Virus record (IMG/VR): IMGVR_UViG_3300020178_000002
Span: 124,001 to 188,000 of that record
DNA: 64,000 nucleotides
Reading direction: 5' to 3' (one strand)
This document shows, piece after piece, positions 42,187 through 62,267 of the stretch (position 1 is its first letter; every line of letters starts with the position of its first letter). The position numbers and the translations under genes are program-made. Under the pieces are notes generated by a model, which ran no database searches, had not been told where the DNA came from, and was given only the letters and a program-made list of their open reading frames with translations.

Positions 42187-45100
42187 ATGGCTATCGAAGG
42201 AAGCAGCTATCTGCCACCTGGTGTCTATACCAACACCATTTTTGAAACACAAAACCAGAATCAAGCTCTGGTACAAGGTCGTGTGCCTACACTTATAGGT
42301 ACAGGTCGTGAAACAGTTATTAGTACAGGAAATATTCTTGTCAGAGGTTCATCTTCAACAGTAGATCAACGTATTGTAGAAGAAGACCCTACTGGAAGAA
42401 TGGTCTCTGGTGTAGATGGGAATGGAAATTACATCTACACTGATTATAGTGAGGGTGCTAACCAACTACAAGTTAGACACTTTCCTATTGTATCAGGAGA
42501 TGGTTCTGGAAGTACAACTAATGTCCCTAGCTCTGTAACAGTTTCTATTAATGGAACAAACACAGTCATTATCTCTTTAGATGGTGCAAATGGTTTGATC
42601 ACTTTAGCAGAAGCACCTAAAGAGGGTGATGATGTAAGAGTCTCTTACTTCTTTAATAGAACAGACACTTTGGTAGAGGGTGAAAACCTTTCAAGCCAAG
42701 TATCTCCTCAAGACACAGAGCTTTTGGGTAGCAACTCTAACTTTGTTATTGATGCAAGCTCAAATACTCTTATCCTTACTGTGGATGGCGAGACTGGTGT
42801 TATCACTCTCCCTAATGGAGCCGCTGGTGATAGAGCCAACTCTCTACAAAGAGTTATTGCTACTCTTAATGGTGCTGGTCTAGCAACCCTCGAAGCAGAC
42901 TCTTACACTGATGCAGAAGGCAATGACAATCTTATCCTTACTGCAAAAGGTTCTATTCTTGTAGGTAATGGTACAGCGAATTTCTCTGTTGGTGTTTATA
43001 ACAACCAAACAGGAACAGCTCGTAATCGTACTTTCTACACTCAATATGGACCTATTGTAGATGGAAGCAATGGTGGTGTGGTCACTACCGACACATCACT
43101 TGTCACTATCCGAGTTAATGGTGTTGAAGTGACACCTGCTTCTGTCGATGGTGCAAATGGATCTATTACTTTAGCTCTAGCTCCTGTAGTAGACTCAAGC
43201 ATTGAGGTTGATTACTACCACAATACATTCCAAGATCAGTTTGATTACATTCCAGGCAGAGACATTACCTCTATCGACAGAGTTTCTTTAGTTGCTTCTG
43301 GTGGTGGTGGACCATCTTTGTTTGTTCAAGATGTTGACTTTGTTCTTTCAGAGGATCGAATTGTCTGGGGATCTGCTTCTGTGGTATCTGCTGGTTCAAT
43401 TCAAGAGGGTGAAGTTGCTTTCGGAAGCAATCAAATCAGTTCTTCTTTAAGAGATGAGAAAGCATATCTTGTTGAATGTTCTTCTGTTTCAACAACAACT
43501 ATCCCACCTCGAGTTCTCTCAAATACTTTCAAGCTTCCTTTCCAACCTGTAGATGGTTCAGGTTTAGGTAAACCAACTAGAAGAACAGATCTCGTTGAAG
43601 TAAGAACTGGGGTTTCTTTAGCAGATGCTTTGGAGAGAAGTCCTGCCACAGTTGTTAAAGTAGACCCTGTAAATTCACAAGTGGTTCTATCCTCAGCAGT
43701 TCCAACAAACCATAAGGTTTTTGCAAGCTTCTACTACTCAAACATCCAAGACAGCTTTGGCACTTCAGCTTATGTTGTGGAGGTAGAGAGTGTTGGTGCT
43801 TCTGGCATTGGTACATATTCTCTTTCATCTCCTACTAGAACCTTCTATAGTGTTGATTTGGAGAGTAAGGGTGTAGATCTTCAAGAAGTTACTTTAACAT
43901 TCCCTTCTGGATCTGAAGCAAGATCTGGTGCTAGGATTGCTGATGGAACTCCTGTTTCAGAGAATGTGACTGTTGAAATCAGAAACTATGATGAAACACC
44001 TGCATTTTTCTTCTCTGAAGGCTTTGGTGACTACTTCCTAATTCAAGGTTCTTCTGACACCTTAGCGATGGAAATTGATCTTCAAGCAACTACTGTTGAT
44101 TTTTCTGCCCCAATGGGTGCTGGTAGAAATGGTAATATTACAACAGTTGTCGGTGGGGTTCTTCCTTATGATGCTGCATCTAACAATACCAACTATGGTG
44201 CAACAGCTTTAACAAGAGCTATGACTCTTACTGTTGATGGTATTACATTTGCAGAGGCTTCAATTAATGGTGTTGGTGATGATGTAGAAGATTGGGTTTC
44301 TGCAATCAATACTGTTGCTGATGCAGAAGCACCTGTTTACACTTCAATGTCAGCATTTGGTGCTTGGGAAGCTAAAGCCAACACCTATGCCTCTTTCAAG
44401 TTCAGATATGTAGGTGATAGCAATGGTTCAAGTGTTGCTACTGCTACTATCCAAGCTGCTGTGTATTTAAGTCAAACAGATCTTGCTAATGCTGTATCTA
44501 CAGCTATCACGAATGCAATCGCAAATGATATTGTAAATGCAAATGCAGACTTCACAGGGTTAAGCTTAACCTGTGGTGTAGATAGCTTGAGTAGATTGAC
44601 TTTCTCATTGGACTCGCTTCCTAATCTGAATGATACTTATGGCTTCATTGAGTTTATTTCAGATACAGATACCTCGTTCTTAACAATTGCTGGTATTGAC
44701 TATGATACTGAAAATAACACTACAAATGGAAATGGTACTCAGACTAAGTTCGGATATCTTCCTGTAGCAGCTTTCTCAAGAACAACCCTTACCTCTGGAG
44801 AGCTTAGAGATAGACTCATCCTTAAGGGCAGAACTGTGGTTGGTAATTCTTACTATCCTGTTTCTGACCTTGGTGTTTCAATTGATCAAGGTACAAGAGT
44901 AGAGGATGCTGGTTTTGAAGTTGGAACAGTAGTTCCTTCAGTAAGAACATCAGTAGTAGATGCTCCAAGTATTCTTTTGAGACTCGGTTGGTCAGAAGTT
45001 GATGGCGATGGTATACCTGCAAAGACTCTTTACAGCACAGGCAATGACCAGAACAACACTCTATCTTTAGAGATTGATGGTCAGACTATCAACATCACTC

Positions 45101-46998
45101 TAAATGATGCTACTGCTCAAGGTAATCTGACTTCAATTACAGATATCCTAACAGACATTTCTGGAGACTTGGCTGGAAGTGCTACTGCACATATTGAGGG
45201 TGCTGGTATTCGCATTGTAAATGCTAATGCAAACATCAGCTCTTACATTAAAGTTGGTGCAGGCACAGGGAACAGTGCATTTGGTGTCACAGAGGGAGAT
45301 TCTGTCTCTGCTGTGGGTGTAAGTGCTAAAGCTGTTGTTTCTTCTCTTATGAGTCATTCTGAAGCTAAAGCTAATTTCTCTACCTCTTTGTTCTCAACAG
45401 AGCCACAAGCAAATGCTGCTGTTGGTTATTATGCAGACAAAGCTGTTGCATATGTGTTCAAGAATCAAGTTGGCAGAGAGTATGTTGGATTTGAGAGTCT
45501 TTCTACAGGAAATTCATCTATCCTTGAAGTCACTGGTGGAAGAATTGCAACAACTAAGGGCAATGGTCTTAAGCTTGTTGTAGGCTCTGGTGCAGTAGGT
45601 GAGGAAGCATATCAAGGATTTGTTGTTACTTCAGACAATGCACAAGGTTCTGGTTCTGCAAACACCTCTCGACTAAATGATGCTGTTGGTGCAGATGGTA
45701 TCATTGGTCAAACATATATAGATGAAGTGACAGGCTTAACCTTTACTTTACTTGAGAGAGAAGGTGGTATTGATTATCCTACAGGTGCAGATGCACAGAT
45801 TAGTTTCAAGGTAGGTACTGTCTTCACATCTAATGCGAATATCCCGACTCCAGCTATTCCAGGTGTTTCATTGATTGTATCTAACACTTTAGATACTTCT
45901 ATTGGTGATACTGCATTGGTTGAAGTTTTTAATAAAGAAGGTAATGAGCCAAACTTAGGTCAGGTTTATTATGTTGACTTTACTAGAATTCGTACTGAGT
46001 TTAATACTCGTACCTTCTCTAGTCTTGCAGATGTCATTTCAACCTATGGTGAGATCAGCCCAAATAACTCTTTGAGTCTTGGTGCTTTGTTAGCTTTCTC
46101 AAATGGTGCAACTGCAATAGCCTGTAAGCAAGTTCAACTTGAAGCAGGAGAGTCAAGCTTAAGTGAAGATCAAGTGGTTCAAGCAATCCAAGACCTTGAG
46201 GGTGAGATTGTTCCAGGATTGACACCATCTGTTATTGTTCCTTTGTACCCAGCCACTACAGCGATTGTTTCTGCAATCTCTAACCACTGTGACATTCAGT
46301 CCTCTTTGCGTTATCGTTCAGAGCGTAGAGCTGTTTTGGGTGTAAGAGCTGGAACACAACCTAGAGAAGTACAGTCTCTAGCACAATCTGCAAACAACAC
46401 AAGAATCTGTATTGTCTATCCAGACCTTGCAAACGTTTCTTATGTAGATGGAAATGGTATCACTCAAACAATTCTTGTCGGTGGTGAGTATGTTGCTGTT
46501 GCAACAGCTTTAGCAACAAGCAATCCTTCTATTGATAGTGCTACTCCTTGGACAGGTCGTTCTATTGCAGGTATTTCTTCACTTGCTCGTCTACTTGACG
46601 AGGTAGATGCAAATGCAACTGCAAATGCAGGTGTTACAGTTCTTTCTCAAAGAGCTGATGGCATTAAGGTAAGACATGGCTTAACTACAAACATGACTTC
46701 TGTTCTTACAAAGACTCCTACTGTTATCCAGATTGCAGATGACGTTCAGATTCGCTCTAGGAACTTACTTTCACGCTATGTAGGGGTTAAGTTCGTACCT
46801 CAAGTGATTCAGCAAATAGAGGGTAGATTAAACGCTTTCTTTAAGCAACTTGTAAGAGATCAAATCATTTCAACTTACACAGGTCTTTCAGTGTCGAGAG
46901 ATGCAACTGACCCAACTCAGTTGAATGTTGAAGTTTTCTACAAGCCTGTTTACCCACTTCTATATATCCAATTTACTTTCACAGTACAGGGTAGCTAA
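42187..46998 (+). CDS. Contractile tail sheath protein (1603 aa, large insertions)
   Basis: N-terminal YLPPGVYT; C-terminal sheath domain (HCDIQSSLRYRSERRAV, VRHGLTT, YVGVKF, VEVFYKPVYPLLYIQFTFTV). Confidence 0.9.
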   Translation: MAIEGSSYLPPGVYTNTIFETQNQNQALVQGRVPTLIGTGRETVISTGNILVRGSSSTVDQRIVEEDPTGRMVSGVDGNGNYIYTDYSEGANQLQVRHFPIVSGDGSGSTTNVPSSVTVSINGTNTVIISLDGANGLITLAEAPKEGDDVRVSYFFNRTDTLVEGENLSSQVSPQDTELLGSNSNFVIDASSNTLILTVDGETGVITLPNGAAGDRANSLQRVIATLNGAGLATLEADSYTDAEGNDNLILTAKGSILVGNGTANFSVGVYNNQTGTARNRTFYTQYGPIVDGSNGGVVTTDTSLVTIRVNGVEVTPASVDGANGSITLALAPVVDSSIEVDYYHNTFQDQFDYIPGRDITSIDRVSLVASGGGGPSLFVQDVDFVLSEDRIVWGSASVVSAGSIQEGEVAFGSNQISSSLRDEKAYLVECSSVSTTTIPPRVLSNTFKLPFQPVDGSGLGKPTRRTDLVEVRTGVSLADALERSPATVVKVDPVNSQVVLSSAVPTNHKVFASFYYSNIQDSFGTSAYVVEVESVGASGIGTYSLSSPTRTFYSVDLESKGVDLQEVTLTFPSGSEARSGARIADGTPVSENVTVEIRNYDETPAFFFSEGFGDYFLIQGSSDTLAMEIDLQATTVDFSAPMGAGRNGNITTVVGGVLPYDAASNNTNYGATALTRAMTLTVDGITFAEASINGVGDDVEDWVSAINTVADAEAPVYTSMSAFGAWEAKANTYASFKFRYVGDSNGSSVATATIQAAVYLSQTDLANAVSTAITNAIANDIVNANADFTGLSLTCGVDSLSRLTFSLDSLPNLNDTYGFIEFISDTDTSFLTIAGIDYDTENNTTNGNGTQTKFGYLPVAAFSRTTLTSGELRDRLILKGRTVVGNSYYPVSDLGVSIDQGTRVEDAGFEVGTVVPSVRTSVVDAPSILLRLGWSEVDGDGIPAKTLYSTGNDQNNTLSLEIDGQTINITLNDATAQGNLTSITDILTDISGDLAGSATAHIEGAGIRIVNANANISSYIKVGAGTGNSAFGVTEGDSVSAVGVSAKAVVSSLMSHSEAKANFSTSLFSTEPQANAAVGYYADKAVAYVFKNQVGREYVGFESLSTGNSSILEVTGGRIATTKGNGLKLVVGSGAVGEEAYQGFVVTSDNAQGSGSANTSRLNDAVGADGIIGQTYIDEVTGLTFTLLEREGGIDYPTGADAQISFKVGTVFTSNANIPTPAIPGVSLIVSNTLDTSIGDTALVEVFNKEGNEPNLGQVYYVDFTRIRTEFNTRTFSSLADVISTYGEISPNNSLSLGALLAFSNGATAIACKQVQLEAGESSLSEDQVVQAIQDLEGEIVPGLTPSVIVPLYPATTAIVSAISNHCDIQSSLRYRSERRAVLGVRAGTQPREVQSLAQSANNTRICIVYPDLANVSYVDGNGITQTILVGGEYVAVATALATSNPSIDSATPWTGRSIAGISSLARLLDEVDANATANAGVTVLSQRADGIKVRHGLTTNMTSVLTKTPTVIQIADDVQIRSRNLLSRYVGVKFVPQVIQQIEGRLNAFFKQLVRDQIISTYTGLSVSRDATDPTQLNVEVFYKPVYPLLYIQFTFTVQGS

Positions 46999-49986: not shown

Positions 49987-52743
49987 ATGTTTGATCATAT
50001 ACTAAAAGAGCTAAGAGTCTCTAAAACTTTGCTGGATAAAACATCTGAAGCTCTTAGAAAGAGAGCTGAAGATAAAGAAATTCTTCAAAAAGCTAGAGAG
50101 TCCTTAAAGGATAAAAAATATAAAGACCCCGAGAACAATAAGGAGATCTCTTTTAGTACTGCATACAATAGGAAAGTACCTCAAGCCCAACAAGACCTCC
50201 AGAAAGCCCTCTCCAAAGTCAGGTCTGAAGGTCAAGAAGAAGGTTCAGTGGATACTAGTGGCCTAAATGAAGAACAAGTAGATCTTCTTGAAAGAATAGC
50301 GAAAGGTAAAAAGACCAGCGATATGTCTCTGGTTGAGCAGAGAACCTTAAGAGAGTCTTTGGCCTTACTTTTTGATGCTCAGGACACATTGAAAAAAGAT
50401 GGAGTTGAAGAACCTTTAAAGACAGCAGAGCCTAAGAAGAAAAAACAGTATGCTAAAAAGGTAAAAAAGAAAGTAGTCGAGAAGGGTGAGAAAGTTGTCA
50501 AAAGTCTTAAAAAAGAGAAAGATTTACCAGAAGACACTACCATAGAAGATATTGTAGATGTAGACACCCTAGCTGAAACACATTCTGAAGATGCAAATGC
50601 CATAGATACTACTTTAAAGAAGCAAGAGAGCAGCAGGAAAGATAAGCTTAAGAAGAGGTTTCAAGAGCAAGAACAGAAAGCAGACAAAGATAAAGGTGCA
50701 ATCTTAAAGAGTCTGGAGAAATCCATAGACTCTTTTTCTCAGAAAGCTATTGAAGACCTTGAGGATAAGATAAAAGATGTTAAAGAGTCTTTGCAAAACA
50801 AATCCCATTCTAAAGACAAGCTTGATGATCTTGAAGAACAGCTTGAAGATCTTGAGTACCAGAAAGACATAAGAGAGCTAAATGCAAAAAATACCCAAGC
50901 GAAGTATCAAAAATCATTAAAAGATGCATTGGAAAACATACCTGATTTTGATGATGAACAAACAAAGAAGCTTTCCGAGTCCTATGCTAAAATGGGTGGT
51001 GATCTAGTAAGGAAACTAGAGGATATAGAAGATCTCAAGAGCTTTGTAGATGATAACCTATCAGAGTTAGAAAACTTAGATGAGTCTAGTGAGGAGTATG
51101 CAGAAAATGTAGGTAAACTAATGGCTCTTAAAACAATGAAAGAGGAAGTTATTAGTGACCCTACATTTGGCTTTTCTCCACCAGCTAAGAATTCAAGTCC
51201 AGAATTCTTAGAGGAATACAAAGAGTTTTTAGGGGAAGAACAAAGAAAGAAGTTCAATTCTTTCACCCCCGAAGAAAGAAATTCTGCTAGTTCAAAGCTT
51301 GCGTATGAAAAAGAAGACTTAATGGACATAATAGATGACGCAAGTACTTCACCAGAAAAAAGAGAGGAAGCCCAAAGGAGACTTTTCTTAGTTAAAGAAA
51401 CCGAATCAGCTCTCAACACCTCTCGAATACTGAATGGAGAAGACCCTATAGATGGTTATTACTATGTGGATGAGAATCTTTTAAATATAGCTAAGACTGA
51501 TGATGGTGAATATAATGAAAGTCTAGTCAAAGCTATCTCTGTTATTTCAAAGACAGATGTTTCAAATGAAGAGATGAGAAGCATTGTAGATACTGCTCTA
51601 AAAGATATGCCATTAGAACAGTGGGAGTCCATAGTTGGAGATTCTGAAATATACAATAGTATGAAAGGTCCTTTAGATCCTCTTTACTGTCCCATACACC
51701 CAGACAATATAGCAAAGGGTGTTAGTGGAGAAACAGTAAACAGAAAAGAAGATTGTCCTAGACCTGTTAGTGAGGACATGATCAACACTATCAAAGACAC
51801 TATCAACAAATCCTATTTAGATATACAGACCTCATTTAAAGCTCAATCTAAGAAGAAGTCTCTAACAACTCGTAAGAACAAAAACCTATCTAAGTTTCTA
51901 CATGAAAACCAAGATGATTTTATGGAGAAGCTAGTAAGTGGGGTAGGAAAAGATGGCAATCCAATAACAGACGAAGAAAAGGAAGACTTCATGAATTTCT
52001 TCTTCATGAAGATAAGAGGACTCAGTGTTTTGAATCTTGACCTGCAAGGTGAAAAGATCACAGGTGTTCGAGACATTATGAAGCAACTAAATCGTGTTCG
52101 AAAATTGGATGGGGCAGAGAAGATAAGAGCAACAGAAGAGCTTAAGAAGGTTTTTCTTGATTTAATGGAGAAAGATCCTATCGAAAAGCAGTCTTCTTTT
52201 AATAATCTATTTATTGACTATACTAATACCTATGGAGGTGTATTCATGCACAAAAAATCAACAACATACCAAGACTACCAGAAAAGAAGTAAAGACTTCA
52301 AAGTAGGTATGAAAGTATATTACTTTTGGGAGGGCAACAGTAGCCAACCTGGAGTAGTTGTTGCTGTCTACCCTTCTATTGGTATGGTAGATGTCGAATA
52401 CCCTCATGGCAGTCAAAGAATCCCTGTCGAAGAACTTATCGTTGATGCTTCAGGAGATGTCAAGGCATTGCCTGAGTCAACGATTCCAGGTGGCAGGGGG
52501 GTTGTTCCTGTAAGTGCGAGAGTAGCAAATAACTACTTGAAAAAAGCTATTTATTGGAGAAATATAAATAGAAGATACAAGCTATGTAAAGGTGAAGACC
52601 CCAACAAGCCAAACTGCCCAAAGTGTAAAACCCAAATGGGTAAAACAGTTTATAAGAGAAGAGACTCACAGAGCGAAAGACTATTTGCCTGCCCTAGTTG
52701 TCTCTTTGTTATCAAGTCCTCTGATATTGAAGGAGCAAACTAA
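49987..52743 (+). CDS. Large charged coiled-coil head-region protein with C-terminal SH3-like and zinc-ribbon domains
   Basis: Start moved to ATG 49987; K/E/D-rich; C-terminal FKVGMKV...PGVVVAV and CPKC...CPSC; probable in-frame internal start at 52246. Confidence 0.7.
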   Translation: MFDHILKELRVSKTLLDKTSEALRKRAEDKEILQKARESLKDKKYKDPENNKEISFSTAYNRKVPQAQQDLQKALSKVRSEGQEEGSVDTSGLNEEQVDLLERIAKGKKTSDMSLVEQRTLRESLALLFDAQDTLKKDGVEEPLKTAEPKKKKQYAKKVKKKVVEKGEKVVKSLKKEKDLPEDTTIEDIVDVDTLAETHSEDANAIDTTLKKQESSRKDKLKKRFQEQEQKADKDKGAILKSLEKSIDSFSQKAIEDLEDKIKDVKESLQNKSHSKDKLDDLEEQLEDLEYQKDIRELNAKNTQAKYQKSLKDALENIPDFDDEQTKKLSESYAKMGGDLVRKLEDIEDLKSFVDDNLSELENLDESSEEYAENVGKLMALKTMKEEVISDPTFGFSPPAKNSSPEFLEEYKEFLGEEQRKKFNSFTPEERNSASSKLAYEKEDLMDIIDDASTSPEKREEAQRRLFLVKETESALNTSRILNGEDPIDGYYYVDENLLNIAKTDDGEYNESLVKAISVISKTDVSNEEMRSIVDTALKDMPLEQWESIVGDSEIYNSMKGPLDPLYCPIHPDNIAKGVSGETVNRKEDCPRPVSEDMINTIKDTINKSYLDIQTSFKAQSKKKSLTTRKNKNLSKFLHENQDDFMEKLVSGVGKDGNPITDEEKEDFMNFFFMKIRGLSVLNLDLQGEKITGVRDIMKQLNRVRKLDGAEKIRATEELKKVFLDLMEKDPIEKQSSFNNLFIDYTNTYGGVFMHKKSTTYQDYQKRSKDFKVGMKVYYFWEGNSSQPGVVVAVYPSIGMVDVEYPHGSQRIPVEELIVDASGDVKALPESTIPGGRGVVPVSARVANNYLKKAIYWRNINRRYKLCKGEDPNKPNCPKCKTQMGKTVYKRRDSQSERLFACPSCLFVIKSSDIEGAN

Positions 52744-52744
52744 G

Positions 52745-54133
52745 ATGGCATTTTTAAGGTACGCAAAAGCTAATGTAGTTCGCCCTCAAGTACACGGGCT
52801 AGATTGGGACAAAGTAAGAGTTGCTTCTGGTAATAGGCAACTAAACCAATCTTTAAAGAAAAAAGCTGAAGATATTCTAGGGGAGGCATTTACCCCAGAT
52901 AGATTTCTTTTAACACATGCTACTATCGTATGTTCTGTAGATTCTGTAACGCCTCCAAATACAAAAACAGGATCTATTAAAGAAGGTGGCTTTACTATAA
53001 ACAGAAAGTATTCTGATTACAGAATCTCAAAGGAGACTGACAAGTATATTAATAATAACCTAGACTCATGGTCTAGAGGTGTTATTAAAAGATCTTATCA
53101 GACTTTCATAGGTTCTCATAACTTTGTAGAGCATGTTCAAGTAGAAGAGCTTTCTAAGGGCAAAATCATTGATGCTGTTTTAAGAGACATTGGTGAAAGC
53201 CTCTATGTAGATATTCTAGTAGCTACTGATAGGAAACACAAAGACCTTGTAGAGCAGATTCTCTCTGGCCAGATGAACTCTATGTCTATGGGTTGTTCAG
53301 TCGATTTTACTATTTGTACTAAATGTGGTCACGTTGCAGCAGACGAAACTGAAATGTGTTCACATGTGAAGTATGAAAAAGGAAATACATTCTTTGATGA
53401 CCAAGGCAATAAGCACAGAGTTGCTGAGTTATGTGGTCACGAAGATGTGGGTGAGACTGCTGGTGTTACTTTTATTGAGGCTTCTTGGGTTGCAACTCCT
53501 GCTTTTCCAGGTGCGGTTGCTAGAAATACCATTGAAATACCCTCTTCTGATAACCCCTCAGAAGTTCCTTCAAAATGGGTAGATAAATCTGCAAGCCTTT
53601 CTTTAACTTCTGCTTTTGGAATGGAAGAAGAAGAAGAATCTGAAGAAGGTGGAGATAAAGAACCAGCAGACGAGTCTCTCCTTAAGAAGCTAGATTCAGT
53701 ATATGAGCAAGCTATCATAGACAGATTCAAGAATAAGCTTGAAACTGAGATGAAGAAAGAGAAAGCTCAAGAGAAACTCTATCCTCCCACAAGTCAATCT
53801 TCTGTAGCCCAGAACGACACTGTGATTAAAGAAGGAAAGAAAGTCTCAACCAGAGAGTATACTAAAGCATTAGATATTTCTGTAAAGACAGCTTCTAATT
53901 TAGAAGAAGCACTCTTTAACATTGCTTTAGTAAACAATCACTTTGGTGTCAGCATCCCTTCTCACCTTTATAAGATAGCCAGTAAGCTAGGAAGCACTTC
54001 TAAATATGCATCTGTTCAAGATTATATTGAGAAAGCTGTAAGCCTACATGGTAAAGCATTATCGGAGAAAGATTCTTTCATCTTAATTCGGTTAGCAAAA
54101 ATAACATCCCTTAACAACTTCGGGCAGAAATAA
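52745..54133 (+). CDS. Prohead maturation protease (HK97/herpes assemblin-like) with Zn-binding insertion
   Basis: Start moved to ATG 52745 (AAGGAG SD); NFVEH, GKIIDA, SMSMGC, CTKCGH...CSH, FIEASWVATPAFPGA; upstream of scaffold and capsid genes. Confidence 0.8.
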   Translation: MAFLRYAKANVVRPQVHGLDWDKVRVASGNRQLNQSLKKKAEDILGEAFTPDRFLLTHATIVCSVDSVTPPNTKTGSIKEGGFTINRKYSDYRISKETDKYINNNLDSWSRGVIKRSYQTFIGSHNFVEHVQVEELSKGKIIDAVLRDIGESLYVDILVATDRKHKDLVEQILSGQMNSMSMGCSVDFTICTKCGHVAADETEMCSHVKYEKGNTFFDDQGNKHRVAELCGHEDVGETAGVTFIEASWVATPAFPGAVARNTIEIPSSDNPSEVPSKWVDKSASLSLTSAFGMEEEEESEEGGDKEPADESLLKKLDSVYEQAIIDRFKNKLETEMKKEKAQEKLYPPTSQSSVAQNDTVIKEGKKVSTREYTKALDISVKTASNLEEALFNIALVNNHFGVSIPSHLYKIASKLGSTSKYASVQDYIEKAVSLHGKALSEKDSFILIRLAKITSLNNFGQK

Positions 54134-54169
54134 AGTCTTGCCCTCTACGATATGAAAGGACTATGCCTT

Positions 54170-55819
54170 ATGTCTAGGTATTCCCGTTCTAAGTCTCGCA
54201 TGACTTCAGCTCGAAAAAGTCGTGTTCGCAAAGCAACCTCATCAGTTCCAGGTTATGATAATCTAGGTTGGGATCACTTCGGTCACCCTGCTTCAGCAGA
54301 ACAACCAGATCTTGAAGAATATGGTATTGATTCTGATTTCGGTGAAGGTGTTCGCAAAGGTCCTTATGAGGACAGCCCTGCACCTGCTTCTTACTCATGG
54401 GAGCCTGATCACCCTGCACACTCAAAGAAAGCTCTAAAGAGTGCTATGGAGCGTAAAGCTGCTAAGTGCATTCGTATTGCTGAGTCTCGTCTTGGTAAGT
54501 TTGCTTCTCAACGTGAGATCGAAGATCTTGCACTTCGCTTCATGGATCTTCCTAACAGTGTAATCAACTCAAGAGTTGCTAGCATTGAAGACCCAATGGC
54601 TGAAGAAATTGATGCTATGCATGATATGTATGCAGAAGACATTGATCCAATGGCTGAAGAAGTCGAAGGTATGATGTACGCAGAAGACCCTATGGCTGAA
54701 GAGGTTGAAGGCATGATGTATGCTGAAGACCCTATGGCTGACCTTATGTATGACGACATGGATGACGACATGGGTATGATGGCAGACCTTATGGATGACT
54801 CTATGGATGATTCTATGGATATGATGGCAGACCTTATGGATGACTCTATGGATGATTCTATGGATATGATGGCAGACCTTATGGATGATTCTATTGATGA
54901 CGACATGGATATGATGGCTGACCTTATGGATGATGACATGGGTGATTCTATTGATGACGACATGGGTATGATGGCTGAAAGTCTTTTCGCTATGGAGCAT
55001 GACGCTATGGAGCATGACGCTATGGAGCATGGCATGTTTGCAAGCATTGATGAGCCTGTAGCAGACGACATGGGCGACATCATGGCAGACTTGTTTGGAG
55101 AAGAAACTGAGAGTGAAGCTGATATCCTAGCTGACGAAGTTGCTAGTCTTAAAGCTGCAAATGCCAGACTAGCTCGCAAAGTAAGAAATCTTAGCAGAAC
55201 TGTAAACGCTTCTAAAGCAGAGGAAGTAAAAGCAGAAGAGACTGAGGCAGAAGAAACTGAAAGCACCGAAGAGAAAGTAGCTCGTATCGAGAGACTTGCA
55301 AACGCTTTAGCTGACTACATGGCTGAGATGGAGCGTACTGCTGCTGAAGAGGAAGAAGCTAAAGAGGAAGAAGCTCCTAAAGAAGAAGCTAAAGAAGAAG
55401 CTCCTAAAGAGGAAGCTAAAGAAGAAGCTCCTGCTGAGAAGAAAGCTTATAACTCAATGGCAGATATTCTTGCAGAGCTTGAAGTAGAGAGTGAAGAAGT
55501 TGATCCTATGGCAGAAGAGCTTGAGCCTGTAGCTGAAGACCCAATGGGACTAGACAGTGTGGCTGACATGCAAATTGATGCTCGTCTTGCTTCTATCTTC
55601 ACTGCTGGTGAAGAAGGTGAAGTTGCAGAAGAAACTGAAGCAGAAGAAACTGAAGCAGAAGAAACTGATGCTGGTAAGAAAGCTTCATATCGCCCAAGCA
55701 CTCAAGCTCGTCAAGCATCTGTAAAGACTCTTGGAAACATCAGTCGTGAAGCTTCAAGCTCTGATGAACTCAGCAAGCTTTGGGAATCTGCTCCAGACGT
55801 AAGCAAATTCTTCGGTTAA
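54170..55819 (+). CDS. Capsid scaffold-like acidic protein with Met/Asp repeats
   Basis: Start moved to ATG 54170; highly acidic, low complexity, coiled coil; between protease and capsid genes. Confidence 0.75.
   Translation: MSRYSRSKSRMTSARKSRVRKATSSVPGYDNLGWDHFGHPASAEQPDLEEYGIDSDFGEGVRKGPYEDSPAPASYSWEPDHPAHSKKALKSAMERKAAKCIRIAESRLGKFASQREIEDLALRFMDLPNSVINSRVASIEDPMAEEIDAMHDMYAEDIDPMAEEVEGMMYAEDPMAEEVEGMMYAEDPMADLMYDDMDDDMGMMADLMDDSMDDSMDMMADLMDDSMDDSMDMMADLMDDSIDDDMDMMADLMDDDMGDSIDDDMGMMAESLFAMEHDAMEHDAMEHGMFASIDEPVADDMGDIMADLFGEETESEADILADEVASLKAANARLARKVRNLSRTVNASKAEEVKAEETEAEETESTEEKVARIERLANALADYMAEMERTAAEEEEAKEEEAPKEEAKEEAPKEEAKEEAPAEKKAYNSMADILAELEVESEEVDPMAEELEPVAEDPMGLDSVADMQIDARLASIFTAGEEGEVAEETEAEETEAEETDAGKKASYRPSTQARQASVKTLGNISREASSSDELSKLWESAPDVSKFFG
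54590..55030 (+). repeat. Coding tandem repeats (EDPMAEEVEGMMYA; 45-bp MADLMDDSMDDSMDM; 15-bp AMEHD)
   Basis: Exact 45-bp units at 54779-54823 and 54824-54868, plus degenerate copies. Confidence 0.9.
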
Positions 55820-56563: not shown

Positions 56564-57442
56564 ATGAGTAATACAGTTGATAATTCAGTAAAACAAAAGA
56601 TCATTAGCGACTACATCAAGACCCCTCAAGGTCGTGCAAAGCTAGCTGCTTCAATGACTCAACCTCTTCGTCTTCGCCGTGACTATACAAGCGTTGGTCG
56701 TAAGACCTTCCTTGTTGAGCAACTTCCTGATGGTGCGTTGCCTATTTACGACAAAGACCCAGACGTAACAGCTTTCGTAGTTGGTGAAGAAGGCGAGAAC
56801 ATTCTTGCTATCACCAAGCCTCGTCGTGTTATCTTCCCTCTCTTTGAGATTGCTTCTAACCCTGAGATTCCTTTAACTCAGATCAAGGAAAGACGCTTCG
56901 ATCTTATCGAGAGAGCACAGGATCTTGCTAGAGCACAAATTCAGGCTGCTGAAGACGAGCGTGTATTCGCTATTCTTGACGCAGTTGCAGCTAATGGTTT
57001 CGACAGCGTTTCTGGTCAAACCAATGCTGACATTCCTGTTATCGCTCCTCTTAATGGTGCTGTTCTTGCTGACGCATACAGCCTAATTGAGAGACATGAC
57101 CTTAGAGTTGCCCGTGTATTTATGAATGCTAGAGACTATGCTGACATTCGTAAGTTCGGTCGTGACATTCTCGATATCGAGAGTCAAGCAGCCCTTCTCA
57201 AGACAGGTCTACAAGCAACTCTTTGGGGTGCTCAAATCATCACAAGTCGTCTTGTTCCTGTTGGTACAGTTTATGTTTGTTGTGAGCCAGAAATGTTCGG
57301 TCGTATCCCTGTTCGTACAGAGTTGACTGTTCTTTCTGCTGACGATCCAAAAGCTCGTACAATCGGCTTCTCTTGCTTCGAGAATCTAGGTATCGGTGCT
57401 TATAACCCTCGTGGTCTTGCTAGACTTACTGTTACTCGCTAA
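56564..57442 (+). CDS. Major capsid protein (HK97 fold)
   Basis: 292 aa; PLFEIASNPEI...RRFDLIERAQ...IQAAEDERVF, VFMNARDYADIRK, LWGAQIITSRLVPVG; strongly biased codons; terminator follows. Confidence 0.88.
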   Translation: MSNTVDNSVKQKIISDYIKTPQGRAKLAASMTQPLRLRRDYTSVGRKTFLVEQLPDGALPIYDKDPDVTAFVVGEEGENILAITKPRRVIFPLFEIASNPEIPLTQIKERRFDLIERAQDLARAQIQAAEDERVFAILDAVAANGFDSVSGQTNADIPVIAPLNGAVLADAYSLIERHDLRVARVFMNARDYADIRKFGRDILDIESQAALLKTGLQATLWGAQIITSRLVPVGTVYVCCEPEMFGRIPVRTELTVLSADDPKARTIGFSCFENLGIGAYNPRGLARLTVTR

Positions 57443-57492: not shown

Positions 57493-57527
57493 AAACCTCA
57501 ACTTCTTCTGGGAGTTGGGGTTTTTTT
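57493..57527 (+). terminator. Intrinsic terminator of the capsid operon
   Basis: AAACCTCAACTTC / GGAGTTGGGGTTT stem plus T run. Confidence 0.85.
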
Positions 57528-57628
57528 ATTTATAGTCCTCCTTAGCTTTGATACTACTTAAAACTTGATCATTCCAAACCCTAGTATTTCGTTTATAGCT
57601 CCCATAGACAAAACAAGGAGTAAAAAAA

Positions 57629-58231
57629 ATGAAGCTGTTCAATACAAAAAGAAGCCTAGCAATACATCCAGGTAGTCTTAGACTAAACCACACCAAGTTC
57701 TTAAACGATTGGTCTAGAAGTAAAGCAGGACCTAAAGATTTTGTTATCTTCTTTAAAGGTGGAAAGTACCTTAAAGTCTCTTTCAACCAGAACTCTCCTC
57801 ACTATAAGAGATCTGTACCGAAGTTTGACAGAAATAAGGTGTTTGGTCTTGCTACTAAAATTCCAAGAGATGGGAAATGGCAATTTGTAGCTTATGTTTA
57901 TGACAATGAACATAATCTGAGACAACTAACTGTCACAGGAGAAACCACTGCCAGAAAAGCTCTCAAAAAAGGTATTCTTGAAATGAGAGAGTATTATGTT
58001 CGCATAAACGGACTCCTTTTAAGAAGTCCAGAAAAAAAACTAGAAGATGCCCTCAAGTCACATGATTGGTGGCACATGATGAGCGATGACCATAGAGTAT
58101 GGAGAGCTGGTGAGAGTAGTATGGAGAAAATCAAGAGCCTGTTAGATAAAGTGGACGATGCCACAGGTAAAGAACTTTGGTTAAAGTATGCACCAGATCA
58201 GTTTAAAGGTTATTATAGTAACAACTCTTAA
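57629..58231 (+). CDS. Hypothetical protein with C-terminal HDW...SDD motif
   Basis: LKSHDWWHMMSDDHRVWRAG; AAGGAG SD; TA-N5-TTTAT upstream. Confidence 0.7.
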   Translation: MKLFNTKRSLAIHPGSLRLNHTKFLNDWSRSKAGPKDFVIFFKGGKYLKVSFNQNSPHYKRSVPKFDRNKVFGLATKIPRDGKWQFVAYVYDNEHNLRQLTVTGETTARKALKKGILEMREYYVRINGLLLRSPEKKLEDALKSHDWWHMMSDDHRVWRAGESSMEKIKSLLDKVDDATGKELWLKYAPDQFKGYYSNNS

Positions 58232-59198: not shown

Positions 59199-59765
59199 AT
59201 GAAGAAATCTGCAAATGAAATTATTCAAAATCTTGAAACCAGAGTAGCCCAGCTTGAAAAGAAGTCTGCTCGAAAGTTCTCCCTATCCGCAGACTACCAT
59301 TATGTGTTTAAGCGTAGTTATTATGCTAAGTCTGTAGAGCGAGTAGACCATTCTAAGGTTCTCTTTGAGGGCCCTAAAAAGAAGTTTATTCCTCAAGGTT
59401 GGTCATATGGAGTTGATGAGATCAATTCTTTTGTTGAGAGAGATTTGATTCAGGAGATTGGTAAGATCCAAAAAGAGATCGAGGAAGTTTTTTATGCAAG
59501 TGGAGTTGACCCAACAGAGTTAAGGGAAGATTTCGAGGACTCTGGCAACAAGTTTGAGTGGGTGTTGGTTGCTCAAGGTCGTGCGTATGAGGGAGAGGTT
59601 TTGAAACTCGCCTATGTACGCATTAAAGATAAGACCTACAACTTCTATGTAGCACCCTCAATCGAAATTAAGGTTCTCAACACAAAAGGCAGGGCTGTTA
59701 AGGCAAACTACATCCTTAATACCCTAGCATCCGAGCTAGGTATGAGAACTGTCCGTATCGGTTAA
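59199..59765 (+). CDS. Leader-tagged hypothetical protein
   Basis: MKKSANEIIQNLETRVAQLEKKSA; AAGGAG SD. Confidence 0.8.
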   Translation: MKKSANEIIQNLETRVAQLEKKSARKFSLSADYHYVFKRSYYAKSVERVDHSKVLFEGPKKKFIPQGWSYGVDEINSFVERDLIQEIGKIQKEIEEVFYASGVDPTELREDFEDSGNKFEWVLVAQGRAYEGEVLKLAYVRIKDKTYNFYVAPSIEIKVLNTKGRAVKANYILNTLASELGMRTVRIG

Positions 59766-59808
59766 GAACGTCTAGTAGGTTTGGACTATGAAAGTGGTCA
59801 GCTAAATT

Positions 59809-59847
59809 AAGCCCTGCTACCCTTATTGGGTGGTGGGGGTTTTTTTT
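59809..59847 (+). terminator. Intrinsic terminator (direct-repeat copy 1)
   Basis: AAGCCCTGCTACCC-TTATT-GGGTGGTGGGGGTTT plus T run. Confidence 0.85.
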
Positions 59848-59902
59848 GTTTGTTTATAGTCCTAGGTGTCGTGTACCCTCACCAATACCATAAGGATTAG
59901 CT

Positions 59903-60802
59903 ATGAGAAGAATAGCATCAGAAATACTCAGAGAATTAGAGATAAGAGTAGCCCATTTAGAGGGTATGAGCCAAGATGACATGAGAAAGTCTATTGAGGT
60001 TGTGATAGAAAAAACTCCATCAAAGGTAAGAATAGATTATGTTGAGTTCCCTAAAACCCAAGAAGAGTTTTTAGAGATAGAAGCAAAGAACTTACCTGTT
60101 GTTTTTTATAATTGCCCTCTTGGAACAGAGATGGCAAGCCGATTAGATTTATTTAAGTCAGGCTTTAATCCTGTTGTGCAAGCAAGGCTTGCAGACAGAA
60201 AAAGCAAAGATATTGGTGAGGAAGTAGATATTAATCTCAAAGACCTTTTAAGGTCAAATTTTAACAATGGTACTCGATATGTAGGAAAACAACGTCTTAT
60301 GAAAGTAGGTTTGAAAAAACTGTTGGGTGTCAATCTTTATGAGAGAGGTCAGATTCTAGATGGGATGGAGGTGAGTTCTGCAAATATGTGGTGTGGGCCT
60401 AAAGGTTGTATTACACCATTACACCTCGACACAATTAACAACTTAGCATGGAACATATACGGACAAAAAACATGGTTTTTAGTGAGCCCAGAAGATATGT
60501 ACCACAATGCTTACTTAGAGCCATTCAAAGAGCCTTATGAAGAAGACTACAAAGGTGATTGGGATAGGAATGATAATAAAAGATCCCCTACTTTTTCAAA
60601 GATGACAGGGAATCCTTTAAAAAGCTTCGATAAGTTCCCGAAAGCTAGGGATATAAAATACCACAAGGTTGTTTTTCGGGAAAATGAGATACTGTATCTT
60701 CCTGCCTATTGGGGGCATTATGTTAAGACCGACTCTGACTCTTTGATGATTAACCACTGGTATGATGAAGTGCCAATTATTCTTAGATCTGAAAGAAAAT
60801 AA
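59903..60802 (+). CDS. Leader-tagged JmjC/cupin Fe(II)-2-oxoglutarate oxygenase
   Basis: NMWCG...TPLHLD (HxD), GQKTW, ILYLPAYWGHYV (distal H), INHW; leader MRRIASEILRELEIRVAHLEG. Confidence 0.88.
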   Translation: MRRIASEILRELEIRVAHLEGMSQDDMRKSIEVVIEKTPSKVRIDYVEFPKTQEEFLEIEAKNLPVVFYNCPLGTEMASRLDLFKSGFNPVVQARLADRKSKDIGEEVDINLKDLLRSNFNNGTRYVGKQRLMKVGLKKLLGVNLYERGQILDGMEVSSANMWCGPKGCITPLHLDTINNLAWNIYGQKTWFLVSPEDMYHNAYLEPFKEPYEEDYKGDWDRNDNKRSPTFSKMTGNPLKSFDKFPKARDIKYHKVVFRENEILYLPAYWGHYVKTDSDSLMINHWYDEVPIILRSERK

Positions 60803-60810
60803 ATTAGAAG

Positions 60811-60850
60811 AAGCCCTGCTACCCTTATTGGGTGGTAGGGGTTTTTTTTT
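60811..60850 (+). terminator. Intrinsic terminator (direct-repeat copy 2)
   Basis: AAGCCCTGCTACCC-TTATT-GGGTGGTAGGGGTTT plus T run; one mismatch to copy 1. Confidence 0.85.
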
Positions 60851-60899
60851 GTTTATTAACTTGTGTTATAAGTAAAGAGAATAACACAAGGGGATAATC

Positions 60900-62267
60900 A
60901 TGGAAGCTCCAGAAATAGACAAAAGAACTTTAAACTTCAAAGACAGGTCTTTGTCAGAGTTTCAAAAGTTAATCAAGTCTCTAAAAAAGTACTCTGATCA
61001 GATTAAATCAGAAATAGATGAGGACACCAAGAGACTTAGAGAACTGAAGATTCTTTTAGAGAGCCTTCCTCAAGTTAGAAACTATATTAGAAAGTTTGTA
61101 GGTCCTCTTAGAGAAGATACGTTTAAGTCAAAGAGGAATAAGACCCTGAAGCTATTAGCTGAGAACCTGTTAGGTCTGAAAACTTTAGAAGAGGTCTTGG
61201 CTGAAAAGGAAAAGATTGCTCTCAAGTCTAGGAGAGACATTCAACTTTATAAAGGTCAGAAAGAATACTTGAAGATCATACCTAAAGAGATAAGGGTATT
61301 CTTGCCAGATACTATCACAATAGATGTAGATTCAGAGGGTAGGGTAAAGAGAATAGGTGAGTTGTTTGCGAACAAGACTTATACGCTCACAGAAAAGCTC
61401 TCTAATCAACGAAAACTCTTAGAGAGGTATAGTGACATAAGTTCCTCACTAAAAAGCGGTCTAAGCTCAAATAAAGAGCAGGAGAGGATTTCATCACTTA
61501 TTAGCTTAATAATATTAGAGACAGGTATTCGACCAGGTAGAAAAGGAAACAGAATCTTAAAAGATGAAGATGAGATTCAGACATTTGGTGCAACTACTCT
61601 AAGAAGAAGCCATGTTAAGTTTTTGAGTGATGGTACAGCCCAGCTTACTTTTAAAGGTAAGAAAGGTGCAACAAACAAAGCCATTGTTAGAGACTCTGAT
61701 GTGGTTTCAGAGTTAAAAAGAATCTCAAAGAGTTGTAAGGGGGAAGACTGTCTCTTTAAGTATGAAGATGGTTCAGATTACACTTACTCCCACCTCAAAG
61801 ATTTCTTTAACAAAAACTTTGAGGGTCTAAAGATCACAGACTTTAGAAAGTTAAGAGCAACAGAAGAAGTATTTAACTTACTCAAAGAAGAAAGAAACAA
61901 CTTACTTTCAAAAATAAAATCCTATTCTGACTTAGAAGCAGCAGAGGCAGAGAAGAAGACTGTAGCTGAAATCTGTAAGGTTTTAACTAAAGCCCATGAG
62001 CAGGCACAGATAGCCCTGTCACATGATTCTTCTAGGACTACAAAACAATCTTACATAAACCCAGAAGTCATTCTTCACTTCTTAAGCACGGCAAACTTGA
62101 AAGGGTCTTTAAAAGACACTATTCTAAAAGGAAAGACGAAACTACACTTTGATCCTCAAATGTTTTTAAGGCAGTCTCAAAGAGTAGCTTCGTCTTTTAA
62201 ATTTTCTGGTGAAGTATCAGGGTTCACCCTACATAACATGGTAGAATTGTTAGAACACATTATTTAA
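60900..62267 (+). CDS. DNA topoisomerase IB (poxvirus/bacterial type)
   Basis: Catalytic pentad visible in GIRPG, FKGKKG, DFRKLRAT, LSH and KQSYINP; FGATTL motif. Confidence 0.88.
   Translation: MEAPEIDKRTLNFKDRSLSEFQKLIKSLKKYSDQIKSEIDEDTKRLRELKILLESLPQVRNYIRKFVGPLREDTFKSKRNKTLKLLAENLLGLKTLEEVLAEKEKIALKSRRDIQLYKGQKEYLKIIPKEIRVFLPDTITIDVDSEGRVKRIGELFANKTYTLTEKLSNQRKLLERYSDISSSLKSGLSSNKEQERISSLISLIILETGIRPGRKGNRILKDEDEIQTFGATTLRRSHVKFLSDGTAQLTFKGKKGATNKAIVRDSDVVSELKRISKSCKGEDCLFKYEDGSDYTYSHLKDFFNKNFEGLKITDFRKLRATEEVFNLLKEERNNLLSKIKSYSDLEAAEAEKKTVAEICKVLTKAHEQAQIALSHDSSRTTKQSYINPEVILHFLSTANLKGSLKDTILKGKTKLHFDPQMFLRQSQRVASSFKFSGEVSGFTLHNMVELLEHII

What the first reader, a model, noticed from the sequence alone, without database searches (positions are those of the whole stretch)
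59809..60856. Tagged JmjC oxygenase cassette bounded by ~40-bp direct repeats
Seen: the same terminator-plus-GTTTAT unit (one stem mismatch) lies on both sides of the JmjC gene, which has an intact HxD...H triad and the N-terminal tag but no clear [KR]xA site right after it. Established: JmjC-only enzymes hydroxylate proteins or tRNA bases. Inference: a recently inserted or excisable moron that gained the tag, giving a virion-delivered enzyme that modifies a host protein or nucleic acid at entry.
Basis: partly seen in the sequence, partly recalled or inferred. Interest (0 to 1): 0.65.

Follow-up and report, generated by a model that had tools for sequence, protein, structure and literature searches.

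The report
Mobile tagged JmjC hydroxylase gene cassette
A marine jumbo phage carries an intact JmjC-type hydroxylase gene, fused to a short N-terminal tag shared by about 28 of its proteins, as a 1-kb cassette between two copies of a terminator; nearly identical wild phages lack exactly this cassette and close relatives carry it at other sites, so it is a gene caught moving, by a route already known from T4-type phages.

Summary
Two terminator units (59809-59856 and 60811-60858) flank a 299-aa JmjC/Cupin_8 gene. They share 26 exact nt, one mismatch, then 12 exact nt, and both fold as strong hairpins. The gene has H174/D176/H272, the 2OG lysine K189, and an N-terminal helix tag.

The proposed empty-site test came out positive. 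Three independently assembled contigs and one Logan contig, 99.7-99.9% identical in the flanks, join tag59199 directly to TopoIB through a single terminator, missing exactly 1002 bp.

Relatives at 96%, 92% and lower identity hold the same gene at four or more other sites. In the close relatives it always sits behind a terminator + T-run + [AG]TTTATAG unit. This matches shuffling at composite terminator/promoter units (PeSL-like, moron-like).

The gene is not a fresh foreign import. Its GC is genome-typical, and every phage homolog down to 61% identity already has the tag. The nearest outside relatives (24-33% identity, bacterial contexts) lack the tag.

Virion delivery and the substrate remain untested inference. 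A prohead protease homolog and a shared upstream motif fit it; the tag's absence from a phage with an 89%-identical capsid protein complicates it.

Verdict: a real, dispensable mobile cassette; a new variant of a known kind.

The parts
59809..59856 (+). Repeat copy A: terminator hairpin (59812-59838), T-run, then GTTTGTTTA. It is the upstream boundary of the cassette.
59852..59902 (+). Conserved upstream motif GTTTATAG plus the 5' leader that travels with the JmjC gene in relatives (L024, L036, L037).
59903..60802 (+). JmjC-only (Cupin_8) 2OG/Fe(II) oxygenase gene, 299 aa, with H174, D176, H272 and K189.
59903..59965 (+). Tag coding part: residues 1-21 form an amphipathic helix (modelled helix 5-21), followed by a low-confidence linker at residues 21-29.
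60811..60858 (+). Repeat copy B: terminator hairpin (60814-60840), T-run, then GTTTAT. It is the downstream boundary, and the single copy left in empty-site genomes has its right-hand part.
59199..59765 (+). Left flanking gene: a tagged 188-aa protein. It is joined directly to TopoIB in the empty-site genomes.
60900..62267 (+). Right flanking gene: a type IB topoisomerase homolog (Topoisom_I, 3.6e-17).
57493..57539 (+). Terminator behind the major head protein gene plus ATTTATAGTCCT. This is the alternative docking site, where relatives L024 and L037 carry the JmjC leader and gene.
57629..58231 (+). 200-aa gene that fills the slot behind the head-gene terminator in this genome. L024 has JmjC in that slot.
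52592..54133 (+). Context: head maturation protease homolog (39% identity, 1e-56, to the annotated protease of Tunturi_5).
56564..57442 (+). Context: major head protein, a homolog of phage G gp27 and the Tunturi_5 major head protein.

Best explanation
The window lies in a complete 312-kb marine/salt-marsh jumbo phage whose head protein is related to that of Bacillus phage G. The finding is a one-gene accessory cassette: an upstream motif and leader, a tagged JmjC-only 2OG/Fe(II) hydroxylase gene, and a terminator. It sits between two copies of one terminator/T-run/GTTTAT unit.

Shown:
- Recombination across the 26-39-nt direct repeats removes or adds exactly 1002 bp. Both states co-circulate in genomes more than 99.6% identical.
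- In close relatives (90-96% nt) the same leader-plus-gene module is docked behind other terminators at the T-run/[AG]TTTATAG junction. In more distant relatives the gene sits in still other contexts. Composite terminator/promoter-like units thus serve as crossover points, as PeSLs do in T4-type phages.
- The leader-plus-tag part can be exchanged separately from the enzyme body (the L037 mosaic).
- The enzyme has the full metal and 2OG-binding set and a JMJD7/JMJD5/TYW5/FIH-like fold.

Inferred:
- It is an active hydroxylase, most likely of a protein side chain.
- It is expressed with other tagged and structural genes from the shared upstream motif.
- The helix tag brings it into a common assembly with the other ~27 tagged proteins. 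That assembly is most likely the prohead interior, which would let it be ejected into the next host (my estimate about 0.4).
- It is dispensable, and probably conditionally useful.
For: Repeats and hairpins.

Empty site: L029 (211 kb, JGI), L033 (JGI) and L032 (ENA) encode the identical left-flank protein followed directly by TopoIB. They have one terminator made of copy A's left flank and copy B's right part. Their flanks are 99.7% and 99.93% identical to the window. A Logan contig of a fourth, independent study joins 59808 to 60811 with no other differences. Filled contigs identical to the window come from several samples.

Other sites for the gene:
- L024: head gene, terminator, JmjC.
- L036: 86-aa gene, terminator, JmjC, tagged 185-aa gene, terminator, TopoIB.
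- L037: head-gene terminator, JmjC, copy-B terminator, TopoIB.
- L006 type: between a 124-aa gene and a membrane-protein gene. These two genes are adjacent in L016 and in the window's own genome.
- L039 type: yet another context.

Junction anatomy. L037 mosaic.

Enzyme: Pfam; PDB sequence matches to JMJD7, JMJD5 and FIH at about 1e-9; invariant H174, D176, H272, K189; model pLDDT 84.8; Foldseek top hits JMJD7, JMJD5, TYW5 and FIH.

Tag: 28 profile hits in the genome; protein-level conservation with synonymous codon variation; a separate helix plus flexible linker in the model; absent from the nearest non-phage homologs, two of which lie in bacterial gene contexts.

Upstream motif: 11 of 36 copies lie 20-110 nt before a gene start, against 1.7 expected (P 4e-7). 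Five of those genes are tagged.

A head maturation protease homolog lies in the same module.
Against: No RNA, proteome or raw-read data were available. Terminator and promoter activity, enzyme activity, tag cleavage and virion location are therefore all unmeasured.

The JmjC tag lacks the K-x-A/S stretch that follows most other tags. LR745208.1, whose head protein is 89% identical, has no such tags at all. This argues against a tag receptor on the conserved head protein.

The upstream motif is not a sigma-70 consensus, and its promoter role is only positional inference.

Polarity is unresolved. All outgroups carry the gene, which favours loss in the empty genomes. The two repeat copies are nearly identical, which also fits a recent duplication on insertion.

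The Logan evidence comes from contigs at about 4x depth.
Confidence: 0.72

Rival explanations
1. Insertion polarity. The empty site is the ancestral state of this sub-lineage. The window lineage recently acquired the cassette at this spot, either by a crossover with a co-infecting relative at the T-run/TTTATAG junction or by integration of a circular cassette carrying one terminator copy. Either route would duplicate the terminator.
For: The two repeat copies are far more alike than the two terminators that flank JmjC plus the tagged gene in L036. L024 at 92% identity also has a single terminator before TopoIB. Copy A's extra GTTT looks like a hybrid joint. Mosaics such as L037 show that such crossovers between relatives do happen.
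Against: Every outgroup examined in this region carries JmjC. Deletion between direct repeats needs only one intramolecular event. The empty genomes fall in at least two slightly different haplotypes.
Confidence: 0.4
2. The tag is not a capsid-loading signal. It is a short coiled-coil that assembles the tagged proteins with each other or with some other late structure. The JmjC would then act inside the producing cell, for example hydroxylating phage structural or tagged proteins, and would not be delivered to the next host.
For: The tag has a two-heptad a/d pattern. There is no defined cleavage stretch after the JmjC tag. A phage with an 89%-identical head protein has no tags. 2OG oxygenases need O2, Fe(II) and 2OG, which are available in the cytoplasm.
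Against: About 28 unrelated bodies share one N-terminal peptide. A prohead protease and a scaffold-like protein lie in the same module. This parallels the T4 capsid targeting sequences and the phiKZ/SPN3US head proteins (literature list).
Confidence: 0.35
3. The substrate is a nucleic acid base (TYW5-like tRNA hydroxylation) rather than a protein.
For: TYW5 is among the structural neighbours.
Against: JMJD7, JMJD5 and FIH, all protein hydroxylases, score better by sequence and by fold. One of the nearest bacterial homologs sits next to RimK-type ATP-grasp genes, a peptide-modification context.
Confidence: 0.1
4. The empty-site contigs are assembly collapses across the repeat, and the cassette is in fact fixed.
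For: Repeats can collapse in assemblies. The Logan contig has only about 4x depth.
Against: The longest exact shared run is 26 nt. That is shorter than the word lengths I take these assemblers to use: 31 for Logan and larger for the others (this is my knowledge, not a tool result). Three long contigs from different samples and pipelines, plus a fourth study, agree. The empty contigs also carry their own SNPs in the flanks.
Confidence: 0.03

Closest known systems
PeSLs, the promoter-early stem-loop cassettes of T4-type phages (Arbiol et al. 2010, PMC2839356; Comeau et al. 2014, PMC4122927)
   Same: Both are short composite terminator-plus-promoter-region units in variable regions. In both, the units bound the insertions, deletions and replacements that distinguish close relatives and act as crossover points. 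Accessory single genes sit between them (searches compared).
   Different: The phage lineage is different (phage G-like head, 312 kb). No sigma-70 consensus is present; instead there is a T-run plus [AG]TTTATAG motif shared with structural and tagged genes. The family is small, about 9 units rather than about 50. Mini-circles could not be looked for.
Morons of lambdoid/HK97-type phages (from my knowledge: Juhala, Hendrix and co-workers)
   Same: It is a single extra gene with its own terminator and a likely promoter. It lies between two genes that are adjacent in a close relative.
   Different: Its composition is not atypical. The phage looks lytic, so lysogenic-conversion expression does not apply. 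The gene relocates within the clade rather than arriving from outside.
JmjC-only hydroxylases JMJD7, JMJD5, FIH and TYW5
   Same: The fold and the HxD...H plus Lys 2OG site are shared, and the protein is a stand-alone catalytic domain.
   Different: Identity is only 16-21%. An N-terminal helix tag is added. The host is a phage and the substrate is unknown. PHROGs has no family for it, and no other phage record in the 50,697-record collection matches it.
T4 capsid targeting sequences, and the propeptides of phiKZ/SPN3US head and ejection proteins (papers listed; details from my knowledge)
   Same: A short N-terminal peptide is shared by many unrelated proteins of a large phage that also encodes a prohead protease.
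   Different: Packaging and cleavage are not shown here. The tag sequence is unrelated. It is restricted to a narrow clade and absent from a phage with a nearly identical head protein.

Membership tests
JmjC-only / Cupin_8 2OG-Fe(II) oxygenases | Double-stranded beta-helix fold of the JmjC type | tested here: met
   Cupin_8 matches at 80.3 bits against a cut-off of 27.4. The AF2 model has pLDDT 84.8. Foldseek finds JMJD7, JMJD5, TYW5 and FIH at E 1e-17 to 1e-13 with TM up to 0.77.
JmjC-only / Cupin_8 2OG-Fe(II) oxygenases | HxD/E...H metal triad and a 2OG-binding lysine | tested here: met
   H174, D176, H272 and K189 are invariant in 36 homologs. They align with the JMJD7 motifs.
JmjC-only / Cupin_8 2OG-Fe(II) oxygenases | 2OG-dependent hydroxylase activity | not testable with these tools
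   This needs purified protein.
Moron | Flanking genes are adjacent in a close relative | tested here: met
   L029, L032 and L033 show it, with flanks 99.7-99.9% identical.
Moron | Own terminator and own promoter | tested here: inconclusive
   The terminator hairpin plus T-run is predicted strongly. The promoter is inferred only from a positionally enriched motif. No sigma-70 site was found.
Moron | Composition unlike the surrounding genome | tested here: not met
   GC is 36.9% against a genome value of 38.4 +/- 2.2%.
PeSL-type mobile regulatory cassette | Indels between close relatives bounded by a repeated stem-loop/promoter unit | tested here: met
PeSL-type mobile regulatory cassette | Sigma-70-like early promoter within the unit | tested here: not met
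   There is no sigma-70-like site on the + strand between 59840 and 59903. A different motif is present.
PeSL-type mobile regulatory cassette | Excised mini-circles | not testable with these tools
   Only Logan contigs were served, not raw reads.
T4-like capsid targeting sequence system | One N-terminal peptide shared by many otherwise unrelated proteins | tested here: met
   28 profile hits in the genome. The bodies have no family in common.
T4-like capsid targeting sequence system | Presence in the head, and removal of the peptide by the prohead protease | not testable with these tools
   A protease homolog is present. There are no proteome data, and the JmjC tag lacks the stretch that follows other tags.
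Transposon / homing-endonuclease element | Encodes its own transposase, integrase or nuclease | tested here: not met
   The 1002-bp unit holds only the JmjC ORF.

The most novel reading that the evidence does not exclude
The helix tag is a general cargo-loading signal of one jumbo-phage clade with about 28 client proteins. Promoter-leader-tag modules and client bodies are shuffled at composite terminators, giving a natural plug-in system for capsid cargo. The JmjC would be a packaged, ejected hydroxylase that modifies a host protein, perhaps a translation factor or ribosomal protein, at the start of infection.
Probability: 0.3. Interest if true: 0.8.

Novelty: new variant of a known kind. Interest (0 to 1): 0.58.

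Why it matters
It gives a clean natural example of how large uncultured phages gain, lose and move accessory genes. Filled, empty and relocated states of one gene all exist in wild populations, and the junctions can be read to the base.

It extends terminator/promoter-mediated shuffling, so far described in T4-type phages, to an unrelated jumbo-phage lineage.

It also puts a JmjC-only hydroxylase into a phage. This enzyme class is best known from eukaryotic translation and hypoxia control. The PHROGs scan and a tblastn of 50,697 deposited phage records found no counterpart. Here the enzyme is joined to a tag shared by about 28 proteins.

If the tag is a packaging signal, it would be a compact, testable handle for loading proteins into large capsids.

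Tried and rejected
- Complex prediction of the JmjC tag (residues 1-32) against the helical part of the scaffold-like protein (residues 310-405 of ORF 54152-55819) gave no verdict. It is not evidence either way.
- PHROGs and Pfam gave nothing for the tagged bodies or the neighbouring genes.
- tblastn of the JmjC and of a tagged paralog against 50,697 phage records found nothing.
- An exact scan of IMG/VR for the repeat core found only a fragment of the same phage. The left-flank protein likewise had no IMG/VR relative beyond that fragment.
- Records behind L006, L007, L024, L029, L032 and L036 are not held, so I could not check whether the empty-site genomes carry JmjC elsewhere.
- A fuzzy-regex scan timed out and was replaced by blastn-short.
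- Only contigs, not raw reads, were available, so circles, junction frequencies and transcript ends could not be measured.
- Rejected: a transposon or homing element, because the unit has no such gene.
- Rejected: an RNA-level explanation of the tag, because of synonymous codon variation.
- Rejected: recent foreign origin, because composition is native and the tag is old in the family.
- A literature search for JmjC in phages returned nothing relevant.
No other genetic code was used.

Full report
**Setting.** The window is bases 124001-188000 of a complete 312,136-bp virus record with terminal repeats, at 38.5% GC. The stretch is held by salt-marsh, marine, seawater and plankton metagenomes from 16 studies.
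- ORF 56564-57442 is the major head protein. It is 89% identical to that of the 485-kb uncultured phage LR745208.1, 47% to Tunturiibacter phage Tunturi_5, and 38% to Bacillus phage G gp27.
- Upstream lie a head maturation protease homolog (52592-54133; 39% identity, 1e-56), an acidic Met-rich scaffold-like protein and a 207-aa protein.
- Downstream lie small genes, the finding itself, a type IB topoisomerase and an SNF2 helicase.

**The observation.** The two units lie at 59809-59856 and 60811-60858 and are 1002 nt apart.
- They share 26 exact nt, one G/A mismatch, and 12 more exact nt. Shuffles give no such pair.
- Each is an 11-pair hairpin plus T-run (-21.5 and -26.5 kcal/mol) followed by GTTTAT.
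- They belong to a genome-wide family of about nine terminator/T-run/(A/G)TTTAT units, but are much closer to each other than to the rest.
- The ORF between them is a Cupin_8/JmjC protein.
- H174, D176, H272, K189, N180 and Y126 are invariant in a 36-sequence alignment.
- By sequence it is nearest to JMJD7, JMJD5 and FIH. By fold it is nearest to JMJD7, JMJD5, TYW5 and FIH (model pLDDT 84.8).

**The tag.** Residues 1-21 form a helix that the model sets apart from the body by a low-confidence linker.
- A profile of eleven window N-termini finds 28 places in the genome, nearly all within the first 25 residues of an ORF.
- Conserved residues use varying synonymous codons, so selection acts on the peptide.
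- Related phages have the tag on other proteins too.
- LR745208.1 and Tunturi_5 have none.
- The JmjC tag ends in LEGMSQ rather than the usual LEK(E/Q)A-type stretch.

**The empty site.** The exact left-flank protein (ORF 59199-59765) is encoded on many contigs.
- On L029 (211 kb), L033 and L032 it is followed directly by the topoisomerase.
- The intergenic sequence there is copy A's left flank, the shared core, and copy B's right part.
- The flanks are 99.7% and 99.93% identical to the window, with their own SNPs.
- A Logan contig from a further study shows the same joint, 59808 to 60811, with 479 and 330 perfectly matching bases on either side.
- The longest exact shared run, 26 nt, is shorter than the assembler word lengths as I know them, so a collapse is unlikely.
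- Filled contigs identical to the window are more numerous: about 19 places against 5.

**Other sites.**
- L036 (96% nt): the order is 86-aa gene, terminator, leader-JmjC, ortholog of the tagged 188-aa gene, terminator, topoisomerase.
- L024 (92%): the leader-JmjC module follows the terminator behind the head gene, where the window has a 200-aa gene. A single terminator precedes the topoisomerase.
- L037/L038 and an X11 contig: the head-gene terminator is followed by JmjC and then by the copy-B terminator and the topoisomerase.
- The L037 gene is a mosaic. Leader and tag are L024-like and the body is 100% window-like, with the switch near the tag/body border.
- L005-L014 (78-80% aa): the gene lies between a 124-aa gene and a membrane-protein gene and is flanked there by a different 18-nt repeat. 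Those two genes are adjacent in L016 and in the window's own genome.
- Relatives at 63% identity: the tag and JmjC follow a 170-aa domain in one frame, in yet another context.
- LR745208.1 has no Cupin_8 gene at all.

**Junctions.** In the close relatives the 5' joint always lies at terminator, T-run, [AG]TTTATAG(TCCT), followed by a conserved leader of about 45 nt. The 3' joint lies right after the stop codon. [AG]TTTATAG is enriched 20-110 nt before gene starts: 11 of 36 copies against 1.7 expected (P 4e-7). Five of those genes are tagged. No sigma-70-like site precedes the gene.

**Origin.**
- GC is genome-typical.
- JmjC divergence roughly follows that of the flanks: 94.9% against 96%, and 89.9% against 92-95%.
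- All family members found carry the tag.
- In a search of 1.84 billion representatives, the next relatives fall to E about 1e-15 and 24-33% identity. They start where the tag ends and lack it. Two of them lie in bacterial gene neighbourhoods.
- The tag is therefore an old addition in the phage family, and the gene moves within the clade.

**Interpretation.** The data show a dispensable single-gene cassette that shuffles at composite terminator/promoter-like units. This parallels the PeSLs of T4-type phages and fits most, though not all, moron criteria. Whether the window gained the cassette or the empty genomes lost it is open; I lean 60:40 towards loss. Enzyme activity is likely from the intact site. 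Co-expression with tagged and structural genes, loading into the head through the tag, and action on a host target are inference only. A complex prediction for tag and scaffold gave no verdict.

Noticed in passing
whole genome G000; in the window e.g. 22213, 25987, 26784, 27847, 28951, 30632, 31740, 32684, 34523(-), 59199: About 28 ORFs begin with the same helix tag (L-E-x-R-I/V-A-x-L-E). None has a Pfam or PHROG family. The tag is absent from LR745208.1 although its head protein is 89% identical.
   Followed up: partly
window 57528, 57591, 59852, 55842, 22170 and elsewhere in G000: [AG]TTTATAG, usually after a T-rich stretch, is enriched 20-110 nt upstream of gene starts (11 of 36 against 1.7 expected). 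It is a candidate phage promoter or transcript-start motif.
   Followed up: partly
window 57629-58231 compared with L024 7859-8928: The slot behind the head-gene terminator holds a 200-aa gene here and JmjC in L024. Both are followed by the same ribosome-binding site of the 178-aa gene, so this is a replacement at one slot.
   Followed up: partly
L037 1-1012; X11 contig: This JmjC is a mosaic. Leader and tag resemble L024 and the body is identical to the window, with the switch near the tag/body border. In this arrangement the 200-, 178-, 86- and 188-aa genes are missing between the head-gene terminator and JmjC.
   Followed up: partly
P0006, P0007, P0011, P0012; G000 82815-83264(-) = L040: In relatives at 63% identity a 170-aa domain (weak DUF3140 match) stands in frame before the tag and JmjC, so the tag is internal. 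In the window's genome the same domain heads a 592-aa membrane protein.
   Followed up: partly
L039 6001-7386: On a 321-kb long-read contig the JmjC is split into two ORFs (304 and 138 aa). This is either a frameshifted pseudogene or a sequencing error.
   Followed up: no
L005-L013 around the JmjC gene (e.g. L006 5975-6003 and 6935-6963): In this lineage the gene is flanked by a different direct repeat of about 18 nt that covers the ribosome-binding site and start codon. L016 shows the unoccupied site.
   Followed up: partly
window 54152-55819: An acidic, Met-rich repetitive 555-aa protein lies between the protease homolog and the head gene and looks like a scaffold. It has two helices with tag-like wording (ARLARKV, VARIERLA).
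   Followed up: partly
window 60900-62267: A eukaryotic-type topoisomerase IB homolog sits in a phage and is conserved next to an SNF2 helicase in relatives.
   Followed up: no
window 185-9208(-) and 42187-46998(+): Two very long ORFs of 3007 and 1603 aa. The second has a tail-sheath C-terminal domain.
   Followed up: no
L035 5181-7774: One of the nearest untagged bacterial Cupin_8 homologs follows two RimK-type ATP-grasp genes. This hints at peptide modification as the ancestral role.
   Followed up: no
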